This document shows, in pieces, positions 34,673-43,068 of a stretch of DNA of 64,000 nucleotides; position 1 is the stretch's first letter, and each line of letters opens with the position of its first letter. Source of the stretch: Dimorphilus gyrociliatus (Eukaryota > Animalia > Annelida); assembly GCA_904063045.1 (NCBI GenBank), contig CAJFCJ010000002.1:3467891-3531890 (forward strand), read 5' to 3'. The position numbers were made by a program, and so were the translations under genes. The notes under the pieces are model-generated. The model ran no database searches, was not told the origin of the DNA, and saw only the letters and a list, made by a program, of their open reading frames with translations.

Positions 34673-37600
34673 CTATTCAAGAACATAAAATACAGCTCCA
34701 TCTAATGGATTTAGATTCAAGCATTCAATATTCTTCATATAGCATTTGTTATTGTATAAAACGAAGCCTTTGCAGTTGGCTGTTTGTGAACATTTGTCTG
34801 TCAAAATTAGGAAAAGAAAGTCAAATTAAATGCTATAATAATTTAAAAGATATTTTATGATAATACCACAACACTCATCGATTGAAGGGCTTGGATAAAC
34901 TCTATCGCCAATATTTCCTTCTGGACAATCGCCTCTCCTGATTCGAAATTTTTGACCTTTAGCACTTTTATAAATATTCATAAATTTTTTCACGTAGGTA
35001 CGAAATACATCGTTTTTTCGTAGAACTATATTGGCTACTGTGCACAAACTTGCTTTCCTGAAGCATGGATAATCAGATTTTGGGTTAAAGTTATATGAAA
35101 ATCCTAGACAATTTATATCATTAGAGCAGAGTCTAGCGCATTCTTGAGGATTCATTTGCTGATAGCCAAATGTTTTCAGTGTACACTCTCCTTCATATTT
35201 ATGATATTCCTTATCAATCGTTGATACTACAATGGATTTTAAAAAAGGAATATTAGCTTGTATAAAACTGCTGTATCGTTTCTTACACTTATCTTTCTTT
35301 TCATATATGAAAGTATTTTCAGCAAAAGTGAGTTTCTTGCATAGTTGATAATAAATTATACACTTATCCTTGAACATGAACGAAGTGCACAATCCATCTT
35401 TATAGCATTCAATGGCGCAGTCTTCCGTTGTATTTAAGTAAACAATTCTATTATCGAGCTGATTATTCAGGCACATTGCTTTAACTTTGCGATATTCGTT
35501 TTCTTGAGCAACAACTAAAAGGTAAAAAGATGTTATTAATACCGAATTCAAAGAAAACAAACTTAAAGGAAAACTCACATAGATTGGCATAAATTTTAGT
35601 GTATAGCTTTTTTTCAATTATACGTAATACTTGATACTTTGTAGAGGTTACGCCTATTCTCTTATAAACATCAGGCCGAAATCTCAGAGATAAATGTCTG
35701 TTTTAATTAGCACAGTTTAATTGAAAATAAAAAGCAAATAGATAAATTACAATCTAAAAAGTAAACAAATCTTTCAAATTTTAGACTACAATTTGCCAAA
35801 CAATTGATCTATTTTTTAATTACTAATTAGTACATATATAGATATATAGATATGTGAGTTATAATGACTTCAGAAAAATTGTTATACCTATATTTATTAA
35901 ATGGATTTCTCCTATCTCTCTCGTGTTTTATCATCGTATACCGTGCTATTTCAGCTGGAAAGCGTGATATTGAATAGTTTGCACTACGTATTCTGAAAGG
36001 AAAAGTTTTCTATTTTATAATTATACAGTCGCGATATTAAGTAATTATAACAAGAGTAAAAATATCTAAAATTCCAAATATCTTGATTTACAAATGAAGT
36101 TTATGGTTAGGAATAATTTTTTCTGTAAGAGAGATGACTTAGGCAAAATTTTTTAAAATATCTATATTTTAATCATCAGTTTTTCATTCTTTTTTTTACA
36201 ATACTATGAATTTAGACCGCTATTAAGTAATTATAACAAATCAATCAGGTCCATCAAAAGTACTTTTTTTATTTTACTTATACATTTTTAGATAGGCAAA
36301 TGATTGTAAATGATAAAATTTTCAAATTTAATACTTGGTATGTATGCCTTTTGCCTTTCTTACTGCATTTAGCCTCCTTTCAATAGAGGCATACAATCCC
36401 TGTATCTCAAAATTTGATATTTTGAAAAATTCCTTCTCAAAAATTTCCCACAGCTCTTTCAAATTTCTCCTGGCGATTTTATGTGGTCTACCAGACATAT
36501 GCAGGTCATTTATTGTTCTAAATTGCTTGAACTGATTCTTTATATTCTGCACTGTAACTGGGCTGCAATTAAATTTTGCTGTTATGCCTTGAATGGTCAA
36601 TTTTGGCCTGCTTAAGTGGAACAGGATATCTTTGCAGATTTCTAAAGATAGCTGATGCATTTTTTAATATTTCCAAAAGAATTGTATGTTGTAAGTTCAA
36701 GGGAACAATATTTGTAGACCAAATTTTTTTTCAATGATACTACTCATACTTATGAGGTCATAATGATGATGTTATAATTTCTTAATAGCTGTCTAAATTC
36801 ATAGTATGGTAAAAAAGAAAGATAAATTGATTCTTAAAATATAGATATTTATCTGATATTTTCCATCATGTTTCACAAGTCATCTATCCTATAGAAAAAA
36901 ATATTCACAACCATACACTTTATTCGTATATCGAAATATTTTGATTTTTAGACATTTTTACTCTTCTTATAATTACTTAATATCGCGACTGTATGCTATT
37001 CAATGAAAACTACCTATTTTGCATATCGTCATCTTCTCCTCCCCATCCATAAAAGCCTGTTGAATATCCATTTACAATTTTAAATTGCAGAGGAGTAAAA
37101 GAAATTGCTCCTCCAACTAATCCACCATAAAACACTTTATATCCGTATTTATCAACATGACTTCCGATATGCCTAGGTGATTTATAACAATTGTATATAT
37201 TACGACCATCTTCAACTAGTAGATCAACATCATGAAATATTATACAGTCGAAAGTATATAATTTTGAAATTTCTAAATATCCTATATTCATAAGTGTTCC
37301 CTTATTAAATATCTGAGGCTGATCTTGCTCAATTACAAAAAATCTATATTCTATCTCTTGACTAGGCAAAACAGAATGCATATGATTCAGAAACATTCTA
37401 AGATGTTTATCTCTATCCCTAAAAGGAACTACAAATGCTACTCTCTGGAATGGTTTGCAATTTTTCGGAATAAATCTTCCTCCATGTAAAATGACATTTT
37501 TATATTTTTTCTCCAATGCTTTCCAAGAATAACTAGCGGTGTCGTTAATGAGAAGTTTCTTAACTTGAAAAGGACGCGTAAATAAATCTATAGAAAATCG

Positions 37601-37891
37601 CATGTATCGTTAATTCTCACCTATTGTGTCTGGGACACAATTACACAGTCTTTGCTCCTTCTTATGAAATCTTAGAGAGTGATATTTAAGTTCGCACTCC
37701 CACTCATATTTCTTCATAAACTCGCTTATTGACTTCTCATTTTGATCAATATACCTTTCAAGAATGCGTACTCGTTGATCTACATTCACAGAAGTTCCAC
37801 AATACTTCCAGGTAAAGAGACGAAAGATAAATGCAATTAATCCGAACTGAGCGATTAATTTAGGTAATCCAAAAATTTGCCTGCGATTCAT
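34673..37891 (-). CDS. GT7 (beta-1,4-galactosyltransferase family) type II membrane glycosyltransferase fused to 3 C-terminal PAN domains, copy G1
   Basis: N-terminal TM segment LIAQFGLIAFIFRLF; VVPFRDR, FNKG, FHDVD, GWGGEDDD. Exons ~35993-35889 (ISRFP..MIKH) and ~35698-35582 (YTKIYANL) complete GT7. A phase-1 splice then leads into PAN1-3; the last exon DKCSQTANCKGF...VLE* stops at 34673. Confidence 0.85.
36026..36991 (-). mobile_element. Non-autonomous Tc1/mariner element of the IR/DR type (966 bp), inside an intron of G1
   Basis: TA dinucleotides flank both ends (36024-25, 36992-93). Ends are CAGTCGCGATATTAAGTAATTATAA. Imperfect TIRs of ~215 bp (36026-36240, 36771-36991) each carry the motif tattaagtaattataac at their outer and inner ends. 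Confidence 0.9.
36328..36660 (-). pseudogene. Internally deleted Tc1 transposase: N-terminal HTH (SGRPHKI) fused in frame to the C-terminal end (SIERRLNAVRKAKGIHTKY); DDE domain missing
   Basis: 110 aa track ORF. GRP motif and the typical Tc1 ...RRL.AV..AKG..TKY* terminus are present; no DDE core. Confidence 0.85.
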
Positions 37892-38820
37892 AATAGTTTT
37901 TTTAGAGGATTAAACCTGTTTTTCGTCGTTAGAGGTGAACTGCTTCAGGCAATCTGCAATCACAACATATTTATTTTATTGAAATATGTCTTGAACTATT
38001 TATTAAAGCAATATACAACAACCTGTTCTATTTTTTATTTGTACGGTAAATATTAAAACATGCAAAATCAATTTGTTGACCTTTTCACATTTGTTCTCGA
38101 AAGTGTTAAATTTCTCAAATTATGGGATGAAATTATCCGAATAAACTAATATAGAAGACATTTTTATATGACCAATCAAAATGCAATTCTGCAATGTCGA
38201 CGATAATACAGTATCCATTTGTTTTAATTAATAATTTTTATTAATATACTAATGTCTCAGTAAATGAATGAATAAGAGGTATATACATTATTTTATAGAT
38301 TAGTGAATATACAGTATAATAGATATATACAGTATATATATAACTCCGAAACCATTATCTTGTCAGACAAAAAACTAACAGACAAATCAATTTTACGATA
38401 GCCACAATTATCCAAATCGTAAGATGTGATACTGTATAGTACAACATTGAAGATAAGATAATAAATTAAGTGCTGTTGAACAATGCGCCACCTTGTATTA
38501 AAAATCTTATAGCACCTTTGAATTATTTTGAGAAAATCAAATAGATTAAACAAACTTTCATATATCGTTTTACAAATAAAGCCATGTTATTCTTCTTGCT
38601 CATTACAAACTAGTTCAACAGCGATGTTAAACATACATTAATATTAAATAAATTAATAAATATTATAACTGATACTTGTAATATTGAGTTTTAAAAAATT
38701 GTCAATAACACTCTCGAACTCATCTCTTTCAGCAAGACAATTAAATATCAATATTTCTATCATATTTCTGTCTAACTTTATAAAACTAAGAAAACTTCAA
38801 TAATATTGATTAATTTTCTG

Positions 38821-41074
38821 TTATCTTTCCACTTTGTTCTTTTGTTTAATGTAAAAATATGCCCCTTCTTTTGGTTGACTTTCTATACAAACAACTCTTT
38901 TCATATAACATTTTTCTCTAAAATAAACGAATCCCTTGCAATTCCATATTTTATAGCAATGTTCTAATAGAAGAAAACAATAAGTAAATAGGAAAAAATT
39001 AGCGAAATTACACTCACCGGCACAATATTCTAGTGGACGATTAGCAATTGTCATTCCGTAATCATTTTTTAAACAGTCTCCTCTTCTAATTAGATAATTG
39101 TATCGATTTGAAGTATAATTAGTAGTTGATTTTTTTTCATAAGTAAAAACTGTTAAACTTTCACTTAAATTAATTTCTGGACACACTTCTGCTTTCCTTG
39201 AACATGGATAATTTGATGTTGGATGAAAATTATAAGTAAAAGCTAGACAACTAGGATCACTTAAACATAATCTTCCACATTCTTGAGGTGTTAATTGTTG
39301 TGATCCAAAAGCACGAGATGGACAATCTCCCTTGTATCTTCGAAATTTATCCTCCAGTGAAATGACTGAAAAATCATAAATAAATCATTATGTAAAGTGA
39401 ATTATGATTACTATACAGTATAATTACATTGTTCTATTCTCATGAAAGTCGTGCGATTTGTAAATTTTGAATCTACTTTACAATAAGTATGAAATTTTCG
39501 GCATTCTTTCGTTTTTTCGAAATACTCGAAGGACAAACAATTAGGAGTTTTATAACAAGAGAGAGCACAATCTTCTATTACTGCTTCAACAAATGTCACA
39601 GAAGAGCTAGGTGATTCCTTGCAACTCCCGTTTACAACACGAAATTGGTTATCTCTAGCTACAACTAAACATATTTAACAATAGTCAGAAATCTTCTTCA
39701 ATTAAATAACTAAATAACTACAGAGATTAGCTATCACTTTTGTAAAAATGCGTCCTTCCTCTATTTTAATAACCTTATATTTGGTTGAAGTTAACCCAAT
39801 CCTATCATAAGACTCGGGTTTCATCCGTAGAGAAACATGCCTGTTTTAAAAATAGCTAGTTAATGAACTATTTAACATAATATTTAAACAAGTTTATACA
39901 CTAATTATACCTGAGTTTATTTACCGGATTTCTTTTATCCCGTCTGTGCTTTATCATTGTAAATTTCGATATTTCCTGAGGAAATCGACTAATAAACATT
40001 TTCTTATTTATCAATCTGAAAAGGCAAACAAAGACAAAAAGAAACAATGAAGCAGGTCCAATTAAGACATGTGCTTTTTACCCAAAAAGATAAAAAATAC
40101 CATCTTATTTTTATGTTAATTGAGTTTTCTGTTGAACTCAACTTACGGATTGATAATAATTTACCTGTTCTTCATGTCATCATCTTCTCCTCCCCAACCG
40201 TAAAAGGCTGTAGAATATCCATTAATTGACTCAAATTGATGTGGAAAGAAAGCCAGACTGCCCCCAATTAAACCTGAATATAATATTTTATATCTGAATT
40301 TATTCACGTACGAACCAATATGTCTCGGAGCCAAAATACAATTGTACATGTTTCGATCATCTTCGGATAACATATCGACATCGTGAAATATAATACAATC
40401 ATAATTAAATAATTTCTTAGCTTCTATAAAACCAATGTTCATTAATGTAGCTTTATTAAATATTCTAGGTTGATTTTGTTCAATTACAAATATTCTGTAT
40501 TGTACAAGTTGGGATTGGAGAATTGGGTGAATATAATTCATAAATATTTTTAAATGTCTTTCCCTATCTCGATAAGGAACAATAATTGCAACCTTTTGAA
40601 ATGGAGTGCAAGATCTGGGTTTAAATTCTCCTCTTTCATTTAAAATACCTTTAAAAGATTCCTCTATCTCTTCCCAAGATGGAGTATAAGTCGTATTTAC
40701 AACTAATTTTCCCTCTGTTTATAGAAAAGTATTATTTTTACATTAATTATATTTTTCCATTCAATTTAAGATTGAATACAACTTAATGTTTTTGGTAGGC
40801 AATCGCATACTGGCAATGAGTGATTTATCCTAACAGTCCGGCTACGATAGTCTCTTTCACAAATATCTTCATAGTACATCAAAAATTTGTCAAGTTTTGA
40901 TGGAAACACTGCAGTTAATGGTATTTCAGTTGTTTCGTATGTTTTTTCAACTTTAATTGTTGCAGTAGGACGGTTCAGTCGTTTATAAATATAATAGCAA
41001 ATAAGTTGAATACAAATTAATAATACAAAAAGTTTTACAAATCTTCTAGTCATTTTTCCAAATTTCCGAATCAT
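38821..41074 (-). CDS. GT7 type II membrane glycosyltransferase fused to 3 C-terminal PAN domains, copy G2
   Basis: TM segment LFVLLICIQLICYYIY; IVPYRDR, FNKA, FHDVD, GWGGEDDD, MIKH, FTKVIANL. Phase-1 intron, then PAN1 (CALSCYKTPNC), PAN2 (CGRLCLSDPSC) and PAN3 (CAEHCYKIWNC), stop 38821. Exon structure matches G1. Confidence 0.87.
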
Positions 41075-43068
41075 TTTTCAATTTCTAGAGCGAACTACAA
41101 TGGAATAATGGCTGTCGTTGAATATCCGAAAAACTATTTTGTTTGATCTTGCGGCCTATCTCGTTAAAGGAGTTCTCAGTTAAACCTTAAAATAAATATG
41201 AAACTAATACTTTTATAAGCATTTCCTGTTTCGACTAAAGAGGCAATGTAAGAGAAACAAAATATTTACAACTTAAATGTCAGTTTACATTATTGTTACG
41301 ATGATTATTTAAAAAAAAGAGTTAATCTATATAGCTGAAATCTACATGCGTGAAATGAAAGTAGTCGTTCATAATTTTGTTAAGTAAATATTAATATATA
41401 GCTTTTAAACATTCTCTGGCTGTAGGTGAAATTATATATTTCCTTTCCTTTCTATTCTCTTCTTTAGAAAGAGTCATACTTTTAGCAAAACGCTGAGAAT
41501 AGTAAATATGTTACATTAAAATCAATTAACTATACCAACTATTACATTAATAATGATTTAACGTTATTACTAGATTACTTGAAATTTTACTAGTATTGTT
41601 TATAGGATAGAAAATATTCAATTTATAATGAGATATTATCAATTCATTCAAGGATATGGTTTTTCAAGAAACGTTGTGGCGCCATCTTTTAGCGATTTTT
41701 AGTTTACTTTCCACCGTTATGTACTTTAAGAATTATTTGCGTTTTACTTTGGTGCAATCTTACATATTTGCAAAGAGTGACAAATATAGAAAACCAAGTA
41801 GATTTTTACCAAAAAAATATATTACTGGGGGATAAGACCAAAAAGGGAGAAAGGGAAATTTTCTCCGCCCCCTACAACCGGAAGTTTAATAGGAAAAGAC
41901 CTATTTTCATAAAGTTTACCAATAACGAGAAAACTGATATTTTTCTCACACAGTATTGCGTATTAATATAGTTTACTAGTAAATAGGCAAAATTAGTCTA
42001 TTACAATTTTACAGGAAATGTTTTCCCAACTTCTATGGGAATGTATAGATATGGCAGGTGTATGAATTTGATATAAAATTTAAAAATAGCTAAATGTGCA
42101 CTCATGAAGTATATTTGTTTATTTAAGGTAGTACTGTGATCTTTGAATAGGCTACAAAATATCTTATTATTACATCAACTAAAACTCTGTAAACAGATAA
42201 AGGATACAAACTTCTACCTGTTAATGAATACTGATAATAACTCTAGTTTAAGAAAACGTTGATAATTTTCAAATAAACACTTTTCTTTGACGTTGTAAAA
42301 TAGACTCTCTCTCTACGGAAACATTTAATTTATTTCTATTTGTAAAATCAATGAAAGTTTAAAAAGCATAAGCAGTTTTATAATACTATTTTTCCAATTT
42401 AAAAATTGACAAAATACTTTTTTTTACCAATTGTACAATTTATTATCACAATGCAGCTTAACGTAAACAATTATATATCAAAACTGCCTAATTGCTTTCA
42501 TATCTCACCATGAACCTGTTTGCTTAAACCGCCTCTCAGCGTTCAGCTTATCAGAGTATTTATCGAATTATGACATCCAACACGTTAACCGGTACTAACT
42601 GGTCGTTGTAATATCCTTTGAGTATCTTAAATTTCACAACCAGCTAAATTAGTTTTATTCAATGCAATAATTCCTTCGAAATTTACTTCCTGTAGAATCA
42701 CTTTCCTACTTTATCTAAAACTATTTTTAACAAGCTCTTCTCATCTCATCAAAATTATATTTTTACTTTAAATGTTTAATATTTAAAATTATAATTTAAT
42801 TATTCATTCATTCATCTATTAAATTAGAATATTCATATTTTATATGTTCAGTAACTTCAAACGGTAGATAGATAAGAAACAATATTAATGAGCTAGTTAG
42901 TCCCCTTCATTTGAATAATGGTGCTAGAGTGCTGGAAGCGCCACTTAACCGAATGGCTCATTTTGTGAAGAGACGCAGAAAAGTGAGGAAAGGTCAATTC
43001 TTTTTTCAGATTTATTAATGTTTTTCTATTTTTTCGCACTTAAAATGAAAATTATTTTATTATTACAG

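What the first reader, a model, noticed from the sequence alone, without database searches (positions are those of the whole stretch)
34673..41074. GT7 glycosyltransferases fused to three C-terminal PAN/apple domains (two tandem paralogs)
Seen: in both genes the GT7 domain ends normally (YTKIYANL / FTKVIANL) but, instead of a stop, a phase-1 intron leads into three six-Cys PAN modules. Independent conservation in two diverged paralogs argues against a mis-join. Established: beta4GalT-family enzymes normally end at the catalytic domain; a C-terminal binding module is the hallmark of ppGalNAc-transferases (ricin lectin), and PAN domains bind proteins or carbohydrates. Inference: an undescribed reader-writer glycosyltransferase whose PAN array selects substrates or gives processivity.
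Basis: partly seen in the sequence, partly recalled or inferred. Interest (0 to 1): 0.87.

Follow-up and report, generated by a model that had tools for sequence, protein, structure and literature searches.

The report
Annelid sugar-transferases with PAN-domain tails
Two neighbouring, expressed genes of the tiny marine worm Dimorphilus gyrociliatus each join an ordinary sugar-adding enzyme (beta4Gal/GalNAc-transferase type) to three small PAN/apple binding modules; the design is real, shared by other annelids and present unnamed in databases, but no paper found here describes it and its job is untested.

Summary
Window 34673-37891 (gene A, 585 aa) and 38821-41074 (gene B, 597 aa), both on the minus strand, each encode an N-terminal signal anchor, an intact GT7 catalytic domain, and three six-Cys PAN/apple modules. 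The PAN array follows a phase-1 intron placed after ...IYANL / ...VIANL.

Spliced contigs of a public run bridge the GT7-to-PAN junction in both genes, so the fusion is transcribed. They also correct two splice sites in gene A.

The pair is not unique:
- The genome is Dimorphilus gyrociliatus. At least 9 of its 13 strong GT7 loci carry 1-3 PAN modules.
- An unnamed relative keeps the same tandem pair.
- Annotated proteins of the tubeworms Lamellibrachia satsuma and Ridgeia piscesae have the same layout. In Lamellibrachia the junction intron has the same position and phase.
- On a GT7-core tree, all PAN-bearing enzymes form one well-supported clade.

The fusion is therefore probably a single old event within annelids. 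It sits in databases under generic names. My literature searches found no paper on it.

The proposed function, a tethered binding module that chooses substrates for a probable beta4-GalNAc/Gal transferase, is inference. The scan noted another GT7-PAN gene elsewhere in this genome (s1-082684).

The parts
34673..37891 (-). Gene A coding span (585 aa). CDS exons: 37891-37621, 37563-37014, 35992-35888, 35697-35579, 35514-35287, 35226-34867, 34797-34673.
   Evidence: GT-AG model. Splice joints 37563/37621, 35992/37014, 35697/35888, 35514/35579 and 35226/35287 are seen in spliced contig record 1 of run X1. The last intron, 34866-34798, lies outside the laid stretch; it is inferred from gene B and the relative.
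37954..38258 (-). Gene A 5'UTR intron (38022-37954) and upstream 5'UTR exon (about 38023-38258).
   Evidence: Joint 37953/38023 with 236 nt on the far side in X1 record 1.
35579..37563 (-). Gene A GT7 catalytic domain (exons 2-4). Motifs present: DVD, WGGEDDD, M..H, with Lys at bovine position 228 and Leu at 289.
   Evidence: Pfam PF13733 and PF02709. Best PDB sequence match is beta4GalT1, E 4e-43. Motif table.
35515..35578 (-). Gene A GT7-to-PAN junction intron (64 nt, phase 1).
   Evidence: Joint 35514/35579 with 119 nt on the shorter side in X1 record 1.
35287..35514 (-). Gene A PAN1, carried on one phase 1-1 exon.
   Evidence: Own PAN HMM, E 1.7e-28. Six Cys.
34985..35226 (-). Gene A PAN2.
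   Evidence: Pfam PAN_1/PAN_4 hit. AF2 model pLDDT 89. VIA Z 9.7 to the plasminogen PAN domain.
34673..34963 (-). Gene A PAN3, split by intron 34866-34798.
   Evidence: Own PAN HMM hits at 34868-34963 and 34679-34798.
36023..36994 (.). Non-autonomous DNA transposon inside gene A intron 2. It has long inverted terminal repeats and an HTH ORF at 36328-36660.
   Evidence: Inverted repeats of 140 nt at 83% complementarity. HTH_23 hit. Dozens of copies in the genome at up to 98-100% identity.
38821..41074 (-). Gene B coding span (597 aa). CDS exons: 41074-40783, 40714-40165, 40015-39911, 39840-39722, 39664-39428, 39365-39018, 38963-38821.
   Evidence: GT-AG model. All six introns are seen as joints in X1 contigs.
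39665..39721 (-). Gene B GT7-to-PAN junction intron (57 nt, phase 1).
   Evidence: Joint 39664/39722 with 118 nt on the shorter side in X1 record 3.
38821..39664 (-). Gene B PAN1 (39662-39429), PAN2 (39363-39130) and PAN3 (39111-39007 plus 38964-38836).
   Evidence: Own PAN HMM, E 3e-29, 4e-27, 3e-9 and 8e-17. Pfam PAN_1 24.6 bits on PAN1.
38254..38820 (-). Gene B 3'UTR as covered by the RNA contig.
   Evidence: X1 record 3 covers 38254-38963 without a break.

Best explanation
Shown: genes A and B are tandem paralogs that encode type II membrane proteins. Each has a short cytoplasmic tail, one N-terminal hydrophobic anchor, a stem, an intact GT7 catalytic domain of the beta4GalT1-6 / invertebrate 'bre-4-like' class, and a C-terminal (hence luminal) array of three PAN/apple modules. 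Both fused mRNAs exist.

Shown: the genes belong to a GT7-PAN clade seen so far only in annelids (Dimorphilus and a relative, the siboglinids Lamellibrachia and Ridgeia), apart from one contig of unknown origin.

Inferred: the clade most likely arose once, when a phase 1-1 PAN exon was placed behind the last GT7 exon. It then multiplied to at least 9 loci in D. gyrociliatus.

Inferred: the catalytic domain transfers a hexose or HexNAc from a UDP-sugar in beta1,4 linkage onto GlcNAc-terminated glycans in the Golgi. GalNAc is the most likely sugar, because the donor-gating Tyr289 is Leu, as in invertebrate beta4GalNAc-transferases.

Inferred: the PAN array is a tethered binding module, for a glycan or a protein surface, that recruits the enzyme to particular secretory substrates or holds it on them. 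Candidate substrates are the very abundant PAN-rich and mucin-like secreted proteins of this worm.
For: Gene structure and domains:
- Gene models and shared intron phases.
- GT7 and PAN Pfam hits.
- Catalytic motifs DVD, WGGEDDD and M..H are intact. The best solved relative is beta4GalT1 at E 4e-43, against beta4GalT7 at 2e-23.
- There is a single N-terminal hydrophobic segment and no other.

Transcription:
- Spliced RNA contigs bridge GT7 exon 4 to PAN exon 5 in both genes.

PAN identity:
- Six aligned Cys per module.
- phmmer hits to proteins that score strongly on Pfam's PAN models, such as P0003 and P0014.
- AF2 model of PAN2 with pLDDT 89. Its structural matches are PAN/apple domains: plasminogen Z 9.7, HGF N domain 9.6, the galactose-binding lectin SML-2 8.9, factor XI apple 8.2.

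Conservation:
- The relative's contig L001 keeps the B-A tandem with every PAN Cys.
- At least 9 of the 13 strong GT7 loci in this genome carry PAN modules on the same strand.
- Lamellibrachia and Ridgeia proteins have GT7 plus 3-5 PAN modules.
- In Lamellibrachia the junction intron lies after ...IYAEL in phase 1, as it does here.
- All 18 PAN-bearing rows, plus one short Ridgeia model, form one clade with support 99/97 on a tree built from GT7 columns only.
Against: - No activity, donor, acceptor, localisation or binding partner was tested.
- Leu or Ile at position 289 and Lys at 228 are common in PAN-less invertebrate GT7 enzymes, so they say nothing special about this clade.
- PAN domains bind proteins in many systems and sugars in a few, so the fold does not tell the ligand.
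- Four paralogs carry changes in the WGGEDDD motif (WGDEDxD), so not all family members need be active.
- Contigs cannot exclude minor GT7-only isoforms.
- Other annelids with public proteomes did not appear among the 120 best hits. The family is therefore patchy or under-annotated.
Confidence: 0.55

Rival explanations
1. The PAN array does not select substrates. It serves the enzyme itself, through oligomerisation, Golgi retention, folding or stability, or docking to a partner enzyme or chaperone.
For: - PAN/apple domains mediate protein-protein contacts and dimerisation in factor XI, prekallikrein and HGF, which are structural neighbours of the model.
- The full-length Lamellibrachia model has a fairly high pTM of 0.70 for a multi-domain chain. 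This is compatible with PAN modules packing on the enzyme.
- From my own knowledge, Drosophila beta4GalNAcTB needs a partner protein.
Against: - The module number varies from 1 to 5 among clade members, which fits an adaptable binder better than a fixed structural brace.
- PAN sequences diverge faster than the GT7 core (57% against 72% identity to the orthologue) while all Cys are kept.
Confidence: 0.2
2. The proteins act mainly outside the Golgi. They are shed or surface-exposed adhesion or matrix components in which the GT7 domain works as a sugar-binding unit and the PAN modules cross-link PAN-rich matrix.
For: - The genome has a very large PAN repertoire: 487 first-look PAN_1 candidates, and all 150 that were scored matched.
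- Several paralogs have altered WGGEDDD motifs.
- From my own knowledge, cell-surface beta4GalT1 acting as a lectin-like receptor is an established precedent.
Against: - Genes A and B keep every catalytic motif examined.
- They have the standard Golgi-type signal anchor.
Confidence: 0.12
3. The fusion is an artefact: GT7 and PAN exons belong to separate transcripts, or the join is an assembly error.
For: Pfam PAN scores on the window exons are only just above threshold.
Against: - Exon-exon junction sequences exist in contigs of run X1 for both genes, with 118-119 nt on the shorter side and no mismatches.
- The same order is found in an independent species.
- The same order is found in annotated Lamellibrachia and Ridgeia genes, with a conserved junction intron in Lamellibrachia.
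Confidence: 0.02

Closest known systems
Invertebrate beta1,4-N-acetylgalactosaminyltransferases and beta4GalT1-6 (CAZy GT7; C. elegans BRE-4, Drosophila beta4GalNAcTA/B, bovine and human beta4GalT1)
   Same: - Pfam 7N+7C domain pair, DVD, WGGEDDD and Met/His metal site, and a type II anchor.
- Non-Tyr residue at position 289, as in the invertebrate enzymes.
- The nearest named database relatives are 'bre-4-like'.
   Different: - Those enzymes end right after the catalytic domain or carry low-complexity tails. Here 230-250 residues of PAN modules follow.
- The clade also replaces the Pro before Tyr286 in the acceptor loop (LPY becomes VFY, ILY or LAY).
Polypeptide GalNAc-transferases (GT27 catalytic domain plus C-terminal ricin-type lectin)
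   Same: - One chain carries a catalytic domain followed by a C-terminal small Cys-containing binding domain in the Golgi lumen.
- From my own knowledge, that lectin domain reads prior glycosylation and steers the enzyme.
   Different: The catalytic family differs (GT27, not GT7), as does the fold of the add-on (beta-trefoil, not PAN). Binding by the PAN array is unproven here.
Vertebrate LacdiNAc synthases B4GALNT3/B4GALNT4 with a PA14 domain (own knowledge)
   Same: A beta4-GalNAc transferase equipped with an extra putative binding domain and with protein-specific substrate choice.
   Different: The PA14 domain lies N-terminal to a CHGN-type catalytic domain. There is no PAN module and no orthology.
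Lectin-type PAN/apple domains: Sarcocystis SML-2, Toxoplasma MIC4
   Same: The PAN2 model aligns to SML-2 with Z 8.9 and to the MIC4 apple domains with Z 7.2-7.7. The matched SML-2 entry is a complex with 1-thio-beta-D-galactose; that MIC4 apple domains bind galactose is from my own knowledge.
   Different: Sequence identity is only about 17%. Sugar-binding residues were not compared. Most other PAN neighbours bind proteins or heparin.
Mimivirus R655 (PDB 9crz), a putative GLT25D1-like glycosyltransferase
   Same: Its residues 234-319 align with the PAN2 model at Z 9.0. It may be another transferase with a C-terminal PAN-like domain. PMC9546862 calls it a putative collagen glycosyltransferase.
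   Different: It belongs to a different transferase family and is viral. I did not check whether the depositors describe that part as PAN.

Membership tests
GT7 beta4Gal/GalNAc-transferase | Glyco_transf_7N and Glyco_transf_7C domains above Pfam gathering scores | tested here: met
   Gene A: 147 and 56.4 bits. Gene B: 97.6 and 61 bits. Cutoffs are 27 and 23.
GT7 beta4Gal/GalNAc-transferase | Metal and catalytic motifs: DVD, WGGEDDD, Met344/His347 (bovine numbering) | tested here: met
   FHDVDLL/ML, GWGGEDDDM and TMIKH are present in both genes.
GT7 beta4Gal/GalNAc-transferase | Type II topology with an N-terminal signal anchor | tested here: met
   The only strongly hydrophobic 19-mer lies at residues 5-23 (A) and 12-30 (B). 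This rests on a hydropathy scan only.
GT7 beta4Gal/GalNAc-transferase | Transfer of Gal or GalNAc from a UDP-sugar to GlcNAc in beta1,4 linkage | not testable with these tools
   Only the donor-gate residue could be read: Leu at 289 and Lys at 228.
PAN/apple domain | Match to Pfam PAN_1 at or above the gathering score | tested here: met
   23.9 bits (gene A ORF) and 24.6 bits (gene B PAN1) against a cutoff of 21.4. The match is marginal here. Orthologous Lamellibrachia P0145 scores 31.8 on PAN_1 and 36.2 on PAN_4.
PAN/apple domain | Six-Cys pattern C...CxxxC...C...C...C in each module | tested here: met
   All six modules of A and B align on six Cys. The pattern is kept in the relative.
PAN/apple domain | PAN fold: a central helix packed on a curved antiparallel sheet | tested here: met
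   AF2 model of PAN2, pLDDT 89.1. VIA Z 9.7, rmsd 2.6 A over 81 residues to the plasminogen PAN domain, followed by the HGF N domain, SML-2 and factor XI apple. Foldseek E-values alone were not significant.
Reader-writer glycosyltransferase (ppGalNAc-T-like mode of action) | The add-on domain binds a glycan or protein determinant of the substrate and changes site choice or rate | not testable with these tools
   Only the architecture (a C-terminal luminal binding-type module) is shown. No binding data exist.
ppGalNAc-T family proper (GT27 plus ricin B lectin) | GT27 catalytic domain and beta-trefoil lectin | tested here: not met
   No Glycos_transf_2 or Ricin_B_lectin hit was found. The domains are GT7 and PAN.

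The most novel reading that the evidence does not exclude
The PAN array is a true lectin or protein-determinant reader. It binds either the enzyme's own product (GalNAc/Gal-terminated glycans such as LacdiNAc) or a feature of PAN-rich and mucin-type secreted proteins. This would make the enzymes the first GT7 'reader-writer' transferases. They would be an annelid solution, convergent with the ricin lectin of ppGalNAc-Ts and the PA14 domain of B4GALNT3/4, for processive or protein-specific glycosylation of mucus, cocoon or tube matrix.
Probability: 0.35. Interest if true: 0.7.

Novelty: new variant of a known kind. Interest (0 to 1): 0.47.

Why it matters
Most Golgi glycosyltransferases of the beta4GalT family are bare catalytic domains on a stalk. 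How they pick particular glycoproteins is poorly understood.

This clade offers a natural test of add-on-domain targeting in GT7:
- It is conserved, expressed and multi-copy.
- The module number varies from 1 to 5.
- Full-length and PAN-deleted forms could be compared directly.

It also links two features of these worms: very large PAN-domain repertoires and rich glycan-modifying gene sets. It may bear on how mucus, cocoon or tube materials are built. If the PAN array turns out to be structural only, the finding is a modest note on domain architecture.

Tried and rejected
- **First model of gene A (613 aa).** Rejected. The RNA contigs move the exon 2 acceptor and add an intron inside the former exon 5.
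- **First model of gene B.** It used the donor ACT|GTATAG after PAN1 and broke the frame. The donor CAAT|GTAATT restores the frame and is the one seen in RNA.
- **Representative-library search with the PAN region.** It gave only 14 hits and no full-length fused protein: exon-sized fragments of a relative plus unrelated PAN proteins. Own-genome records seem to be left out there, so this blank says little.
- **Search with a PAN-less paralog.** It found only GT7-only proteins, but it identified the species.
- **Long mollusc GT7 proteins (Mya, Mactra, 576-593 aa).** They looked like candidates but carry low-complexity Lys/Pro/Asn tails, not PAN.
- **Foldseek alone.** It gave no significant E-value for the 88-residue PAN2 model. 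The VIA re-alignment was needed.
- **Literature searches.** Searches on galactosyltransferase or glycosyltransferase with PAN or apple, LacdiNAc with annelid, and Lamellibrachia with galactosyltransferase found nothing on this architecture.
- The spliced full-length proteins of A and B have no tool reference. I therefore did not send them to the database, structure or complex tools, and used exon references and database orthologues instead.
- **dN/dS.** Not computed, because synonymous sites would be saturated at 57% amino-acid identity.


Full report
**What is in the window**

ORF listing and Pfam scans show two minus-strand gene-like series. Each has a large exon carrying Glyco_transf_7N plus Glyco_transf_7C, followed downstream by exons with weak but above-threshold PAN_1 matches.

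I assembled GT-AG models by hand. Gene B has seven coding exons:
- 41074-40783
- 40714-40165
- 40015-39911
- 39840-39722
- 39664-39428
- 39365-39018
- 38963-38821

It encodes 597 aa. My first gene A model had six exons and 613 aa. On those models A and B were 44% identical over about 560 aligned residues.

**Transcript evidence**

One public run (X1, 2017, library kind not on record) holds 61% of the sampled words of the gene A region. I laid it on window 35100-41090. Its contigs skip exactly the predicted introns, all with CT..AC ends on the plus strand, which is GT..AG on the minus strand. They show no mismatches in exons, so the contigs derive from spliced RNA of the same strain.

Record 1 (2598 nt) joins 35514/35579, the GT7-to-PAN junction of gene A, with 119 nt on the shorter side. 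It also joins 35697/35888, 35992/37014 and 37563/37621, and crosses a 5'UTR intron at 37953/38023. Record 3 (1613 nt) joins 39664/39722, the same junction in gene B, with 118 nt on the shorter side, and also carries four more of gene B's introns; the sixth (40714/40783) lies on record 4.

The contigs also corrected gene A. The exon 2 acceptor is 37563, and a 60-nt intron (35286-35227) splits my former exon 5. The revised gene A is 585 aa with seven coding exons. Its phases (1,2,2,1,1,1) and exon sizes (550, 105, 119 nt) parallel gene B.

The last intron of gene A (34866-34798) lay outside the laid stretch and is inferred. The length of record 1 fits the model.

**The GT7 part**

Exon 2 of gene A matches solved beta4GalT1 chains at E 4e-43 and beta4GalT7 at only 2e-23. 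The alignment and a family table show these features in both genes:
- FHDVDL/ML (the DVD motif)
- GWGGEDDDM
- TMIKH (Met344/His347 in bovine numbering)
- Lys at position 228
- Leu at position 289

From my own knowledge, Tyr289 gates the donor in vertebrate beta4GalT1, and Leu or Ile at that place marks invertebrate beta4GalNAc-transferases. However, Leu/Ile289 and Lys228 are also common in PAN-less invertebrate enzymes in the same table, so they are not special to this clade.

A clade-specific change is the loss of the Pro before Tyr286 in the acceptor loop.

A hydropathy scan finds one hydrophobic segment, at the N-terminus of each protein. This fits a type II Golgi anchor and places the PAN array in the lumen.

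**The PAN part**

The six modules of A and B align on six Cys. The evidence that they are PAN/apple domains:
- A phmmer search of 1.8 billion representatives with the PAN region found proteins that score strongly on Pfam's PAN models, for example P0003, P0013 and P0014.
- An AlphaFold2 model of gene A PAN2, built on a 27-row alignment, has mean pLDDT 89.
- Foldseek ranked almost only PAN/apple structures, though without significant E-values.
- VIA re-alignment gave Z 9.7 (rmsd 2.6 A, 81 residues) to the plasminogen PAN domain, 9.6 to the HGF N domain, 8.9 to the galactose-binding lectin SML-2 and 8.2 to factor XI and kallikrein apple domains.

Membership in the PAN/apple superfamily is therefore met by sequence, Cys pattern and fold.

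**Which organism**

A search with a PAN-less paralog returned DgyrCDS9314 of Dimorphilus gyrociliatus. It lies on a contig of 1,722,566 bases, exactly the length of contig C13 of this genome. The assembly has 349 contigs, and the introns here are 54-70 nt. The genome paper reports about 350 scaffolds and a median intron of 66 bp (PMC7854359). Earlier notes of this scan had named the species, and this check confirms it.

**A family, not a pair**

The genome has 13 strong Glyco_transf_7N loci. A search with PAN2 of gene A, tblastn with my models, and an HMM built from the six modules all place PAN modules downstream on the same strand at nine of them:

| Locus | PAN modules |
|---|---|
| Window gene A | 3 |
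| Window gene B | 3 |
| C4:2364963 (+) | 3 |
| C4:2370341 (-) | 2 |
| C4:2375601 (-) | 2 |
| C24:477103 (+) | 2 |
| C23:604711 (+) | 2 |
| C23:607195 (+) | 2 |
| C23:382555 (-) | 1 |

Four loci, on C1, C13 and two places on C2, have none.

The public annotation already holds fused models for four of these loci: P0137, P0139, P0142 and P0248. At least one of them looks truncated.

**Relatives**

Fragments found with the PAN query led to Logan contigs of runs SRR23372216, 228, 229 and 231, from an unnamed relative. Contig L001 (8 kb) carries the same B-then-A tandem. Both orthologues are collinear from GT7 through PAN3. Identity is 72-73% in the GT7 core and about 57% in the PAN region of A, and every PAN Cys is kept. 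A third paralog's PAN tail is on L005.

A profile search that admitted proteins up to 616 aa, followed by a search with the hit P0145, found annotated proteins with precomputed PAN Pfam hits:
- Lamellibrachia satsuma: 603, 629 and 697 aa
- Ridgeia piscesae: 773 aa
- one unnamed Logan protein: 709 aa

My HMM counts 3, 3, 3, 5 and 3 modules in these, in that order.

The same searches also returned P0147 (585 aa, one PAN module by my HMM). It carries no precomputed PAN Pfam hit, and it is an uninterrupted ORF on an 8.5-kb ENA contig of unknown origin.

In the Lamellibrachia gene the junction intron lies after ...IYAEL in phase 1. This is the same place and phase as after ...IYANL here.

**Single origin**

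I built an IQ-TREE tree of 49 rows from the 324 columns filled in at least 60% of rows, so PAN columns were excluded. It puts all 18 PAN-bearing rows, plus one 324-aa Ridgeia model that is probably truncated, in one clade with support 99/97. The canonical annelid bre-4 orthologues fall in a separate clade.

Rows left out of the tree: the C1 and C2:4319k paralogs, and most of the database hits.

The clade, the shared phase-1 junction intron and the phase 1-1 PAN1 exon together point to one exon-shuffling event. It happened before Dinophiliformia and Sedentaria split, and lineage-specific duplication followed. The root is set by two cnidarian outgroup rows only.

No non-annelid protein with this layout appeared among the 120 best hits of either search. 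Long mollusc GT7 proteins carry low-complexity tails instead. Other annelid proteomes did not show up either, so the distribution is patchy or under-annotated.

**How it most likely works**

Shown:
- An expressed type II GT7 enzyme with an intact active site.
- A conserved luminal C-terminal PAN array.

Inferred:
- beta1,4 transfer of GalNAc (or Gal or Glc) to GlcNAc-terminated glycans.
- PAN modules acting as a tethered binding unit that brings the enzyme to particular substrates.

Points that favour binding:
- The position mirrors the lectin domain of ppGalNAc-transferases.
- The module number varies from 1 to 5.
- All Cys are kept across deep divergence.
- PAN folds do bind galactose-type sugars in SML-2 and MIC4.
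- This genome is full of secreted PAN proteins: 487 first-look PAN_1 candidates, all 150 scored ones matching. Earlier notes s1-080422 and s1-080450 make the same point.

The full-length Lamellibrachia model is confident (pLDDT 84.7, pTM 0.70). I could not inspect its coordinates, so I make no claim about where the PAN modules sit.

Rivals are a self-serving structural or oligomerisation role, and an extracellular adhesion or matrix role. The second gains some weight from paralogs with WGDEDxD motifs. An artefact is excluded.

**Novelty and verdict**

The architecture is real and old. It is already present in public annotation under generic names such as 'Beta-1,4-galactosyltransferase 2' and 'bre-4'. 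Full-text searches found no paper that treats it.

It is a new variant of a known kind: a glycosyltransferase with a binding add-on. Its interest is moderate until binding or activity is tested.

- One read-laying run of 5,991 letters was used.
- The spliced proteins were never typed into a tool.

Noticed in passing
window 36023-36994 (intron 2 of gene A): A DNA transposon of about 970 bp with long inverted terminal repeats (140 nt at 83% complementarity, plus inner pairs) and a 110-aa HTH_23 ORF. The genome holds dozens of copies and fragments, several at 96-100% identity, so it was active recently. RNA contigs with a few mismatches also map here, probably from other copies.
   Followed up: partly
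window 38023-38258 against 38254-38820: In the RNA contigs the upstream 5'UTR exon of gene A ends where the contig covering gene B's 3'UTR begins, at about 38254-38258. The two tandem genes may be co-transcribed or read through. Contigs cannot show transcript ends.
   Followed up: no
window 40258-40315 (inside gene B exon 2): A minor contig (depth 12.8, against 38-45 nearby) skips 58 nt with GT..AG ends. This would shift the frame inside the catalytic domain. It may be a non-productive splice form.
   Followed up: no
L035:2716-4473 (ENA contig ctg228571 of ERZ25070167): An intron-free 585-aa ORF encoding GT7 plus one PAN module and a low-complexity tail, on an 8.5-kb contig of unknown organism. 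It falls inside the annelid GT7-PAN clade on a long branch.
   Followed up: partly
L028:3609-4126 (G000:C4, downstream of DgyrCDS3148 = P0137): The public model of this paralog (453 aa) stops after PAN1. The genome shows PAN2 and the second half of PAN3 further on in the same strand, so the annotation is probably truncated.
   Followed up: partly
G000:C4:2370341, C4:2375601, C23:604711, C23:607195 (L028, L034, L031; P0142, P0139): Four PAN-bearing paralogs have WGGEDDD changed to WGDEDKD, WGDEDDD, WGDEDVD or WGDEDMD. The single-PAN paralog at C23:382555 reads FGYGGEDDD. Some family members may have altered or lost activity.
   Followed up: no
whole genome G000 (for example C20:800-845 kb, C42:44-52 kb, C16:575-590 kb): PAN_1 gives 487 first-look candidates in six-frame search, and all 150 scored ones match. 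Many lie in dense tandem arrays. The PAN repertoire of this small genome is very large.
   Followed up: no
PDB 9crz (Mimivirus R655), residues 234-319: The C-terminal part of this putative GLT25D1-like glycosyltransferase aligns with the PAN2 model at Z 9.0. It may be another transferase with a PAN-like add-on domain.
   Followed up: partly
L036 (Lamellibrachia satsuma contig JAHXPS010002401.1): P0145 and P0231 lie on the same 196,720-base contig, so the tubeworm may also keep GT7-PAN genes in tandem. There each of the three PAN modules sits on its own exon. In Dimorphilus, PAN3 is split by an intron.
   Followed up: partly
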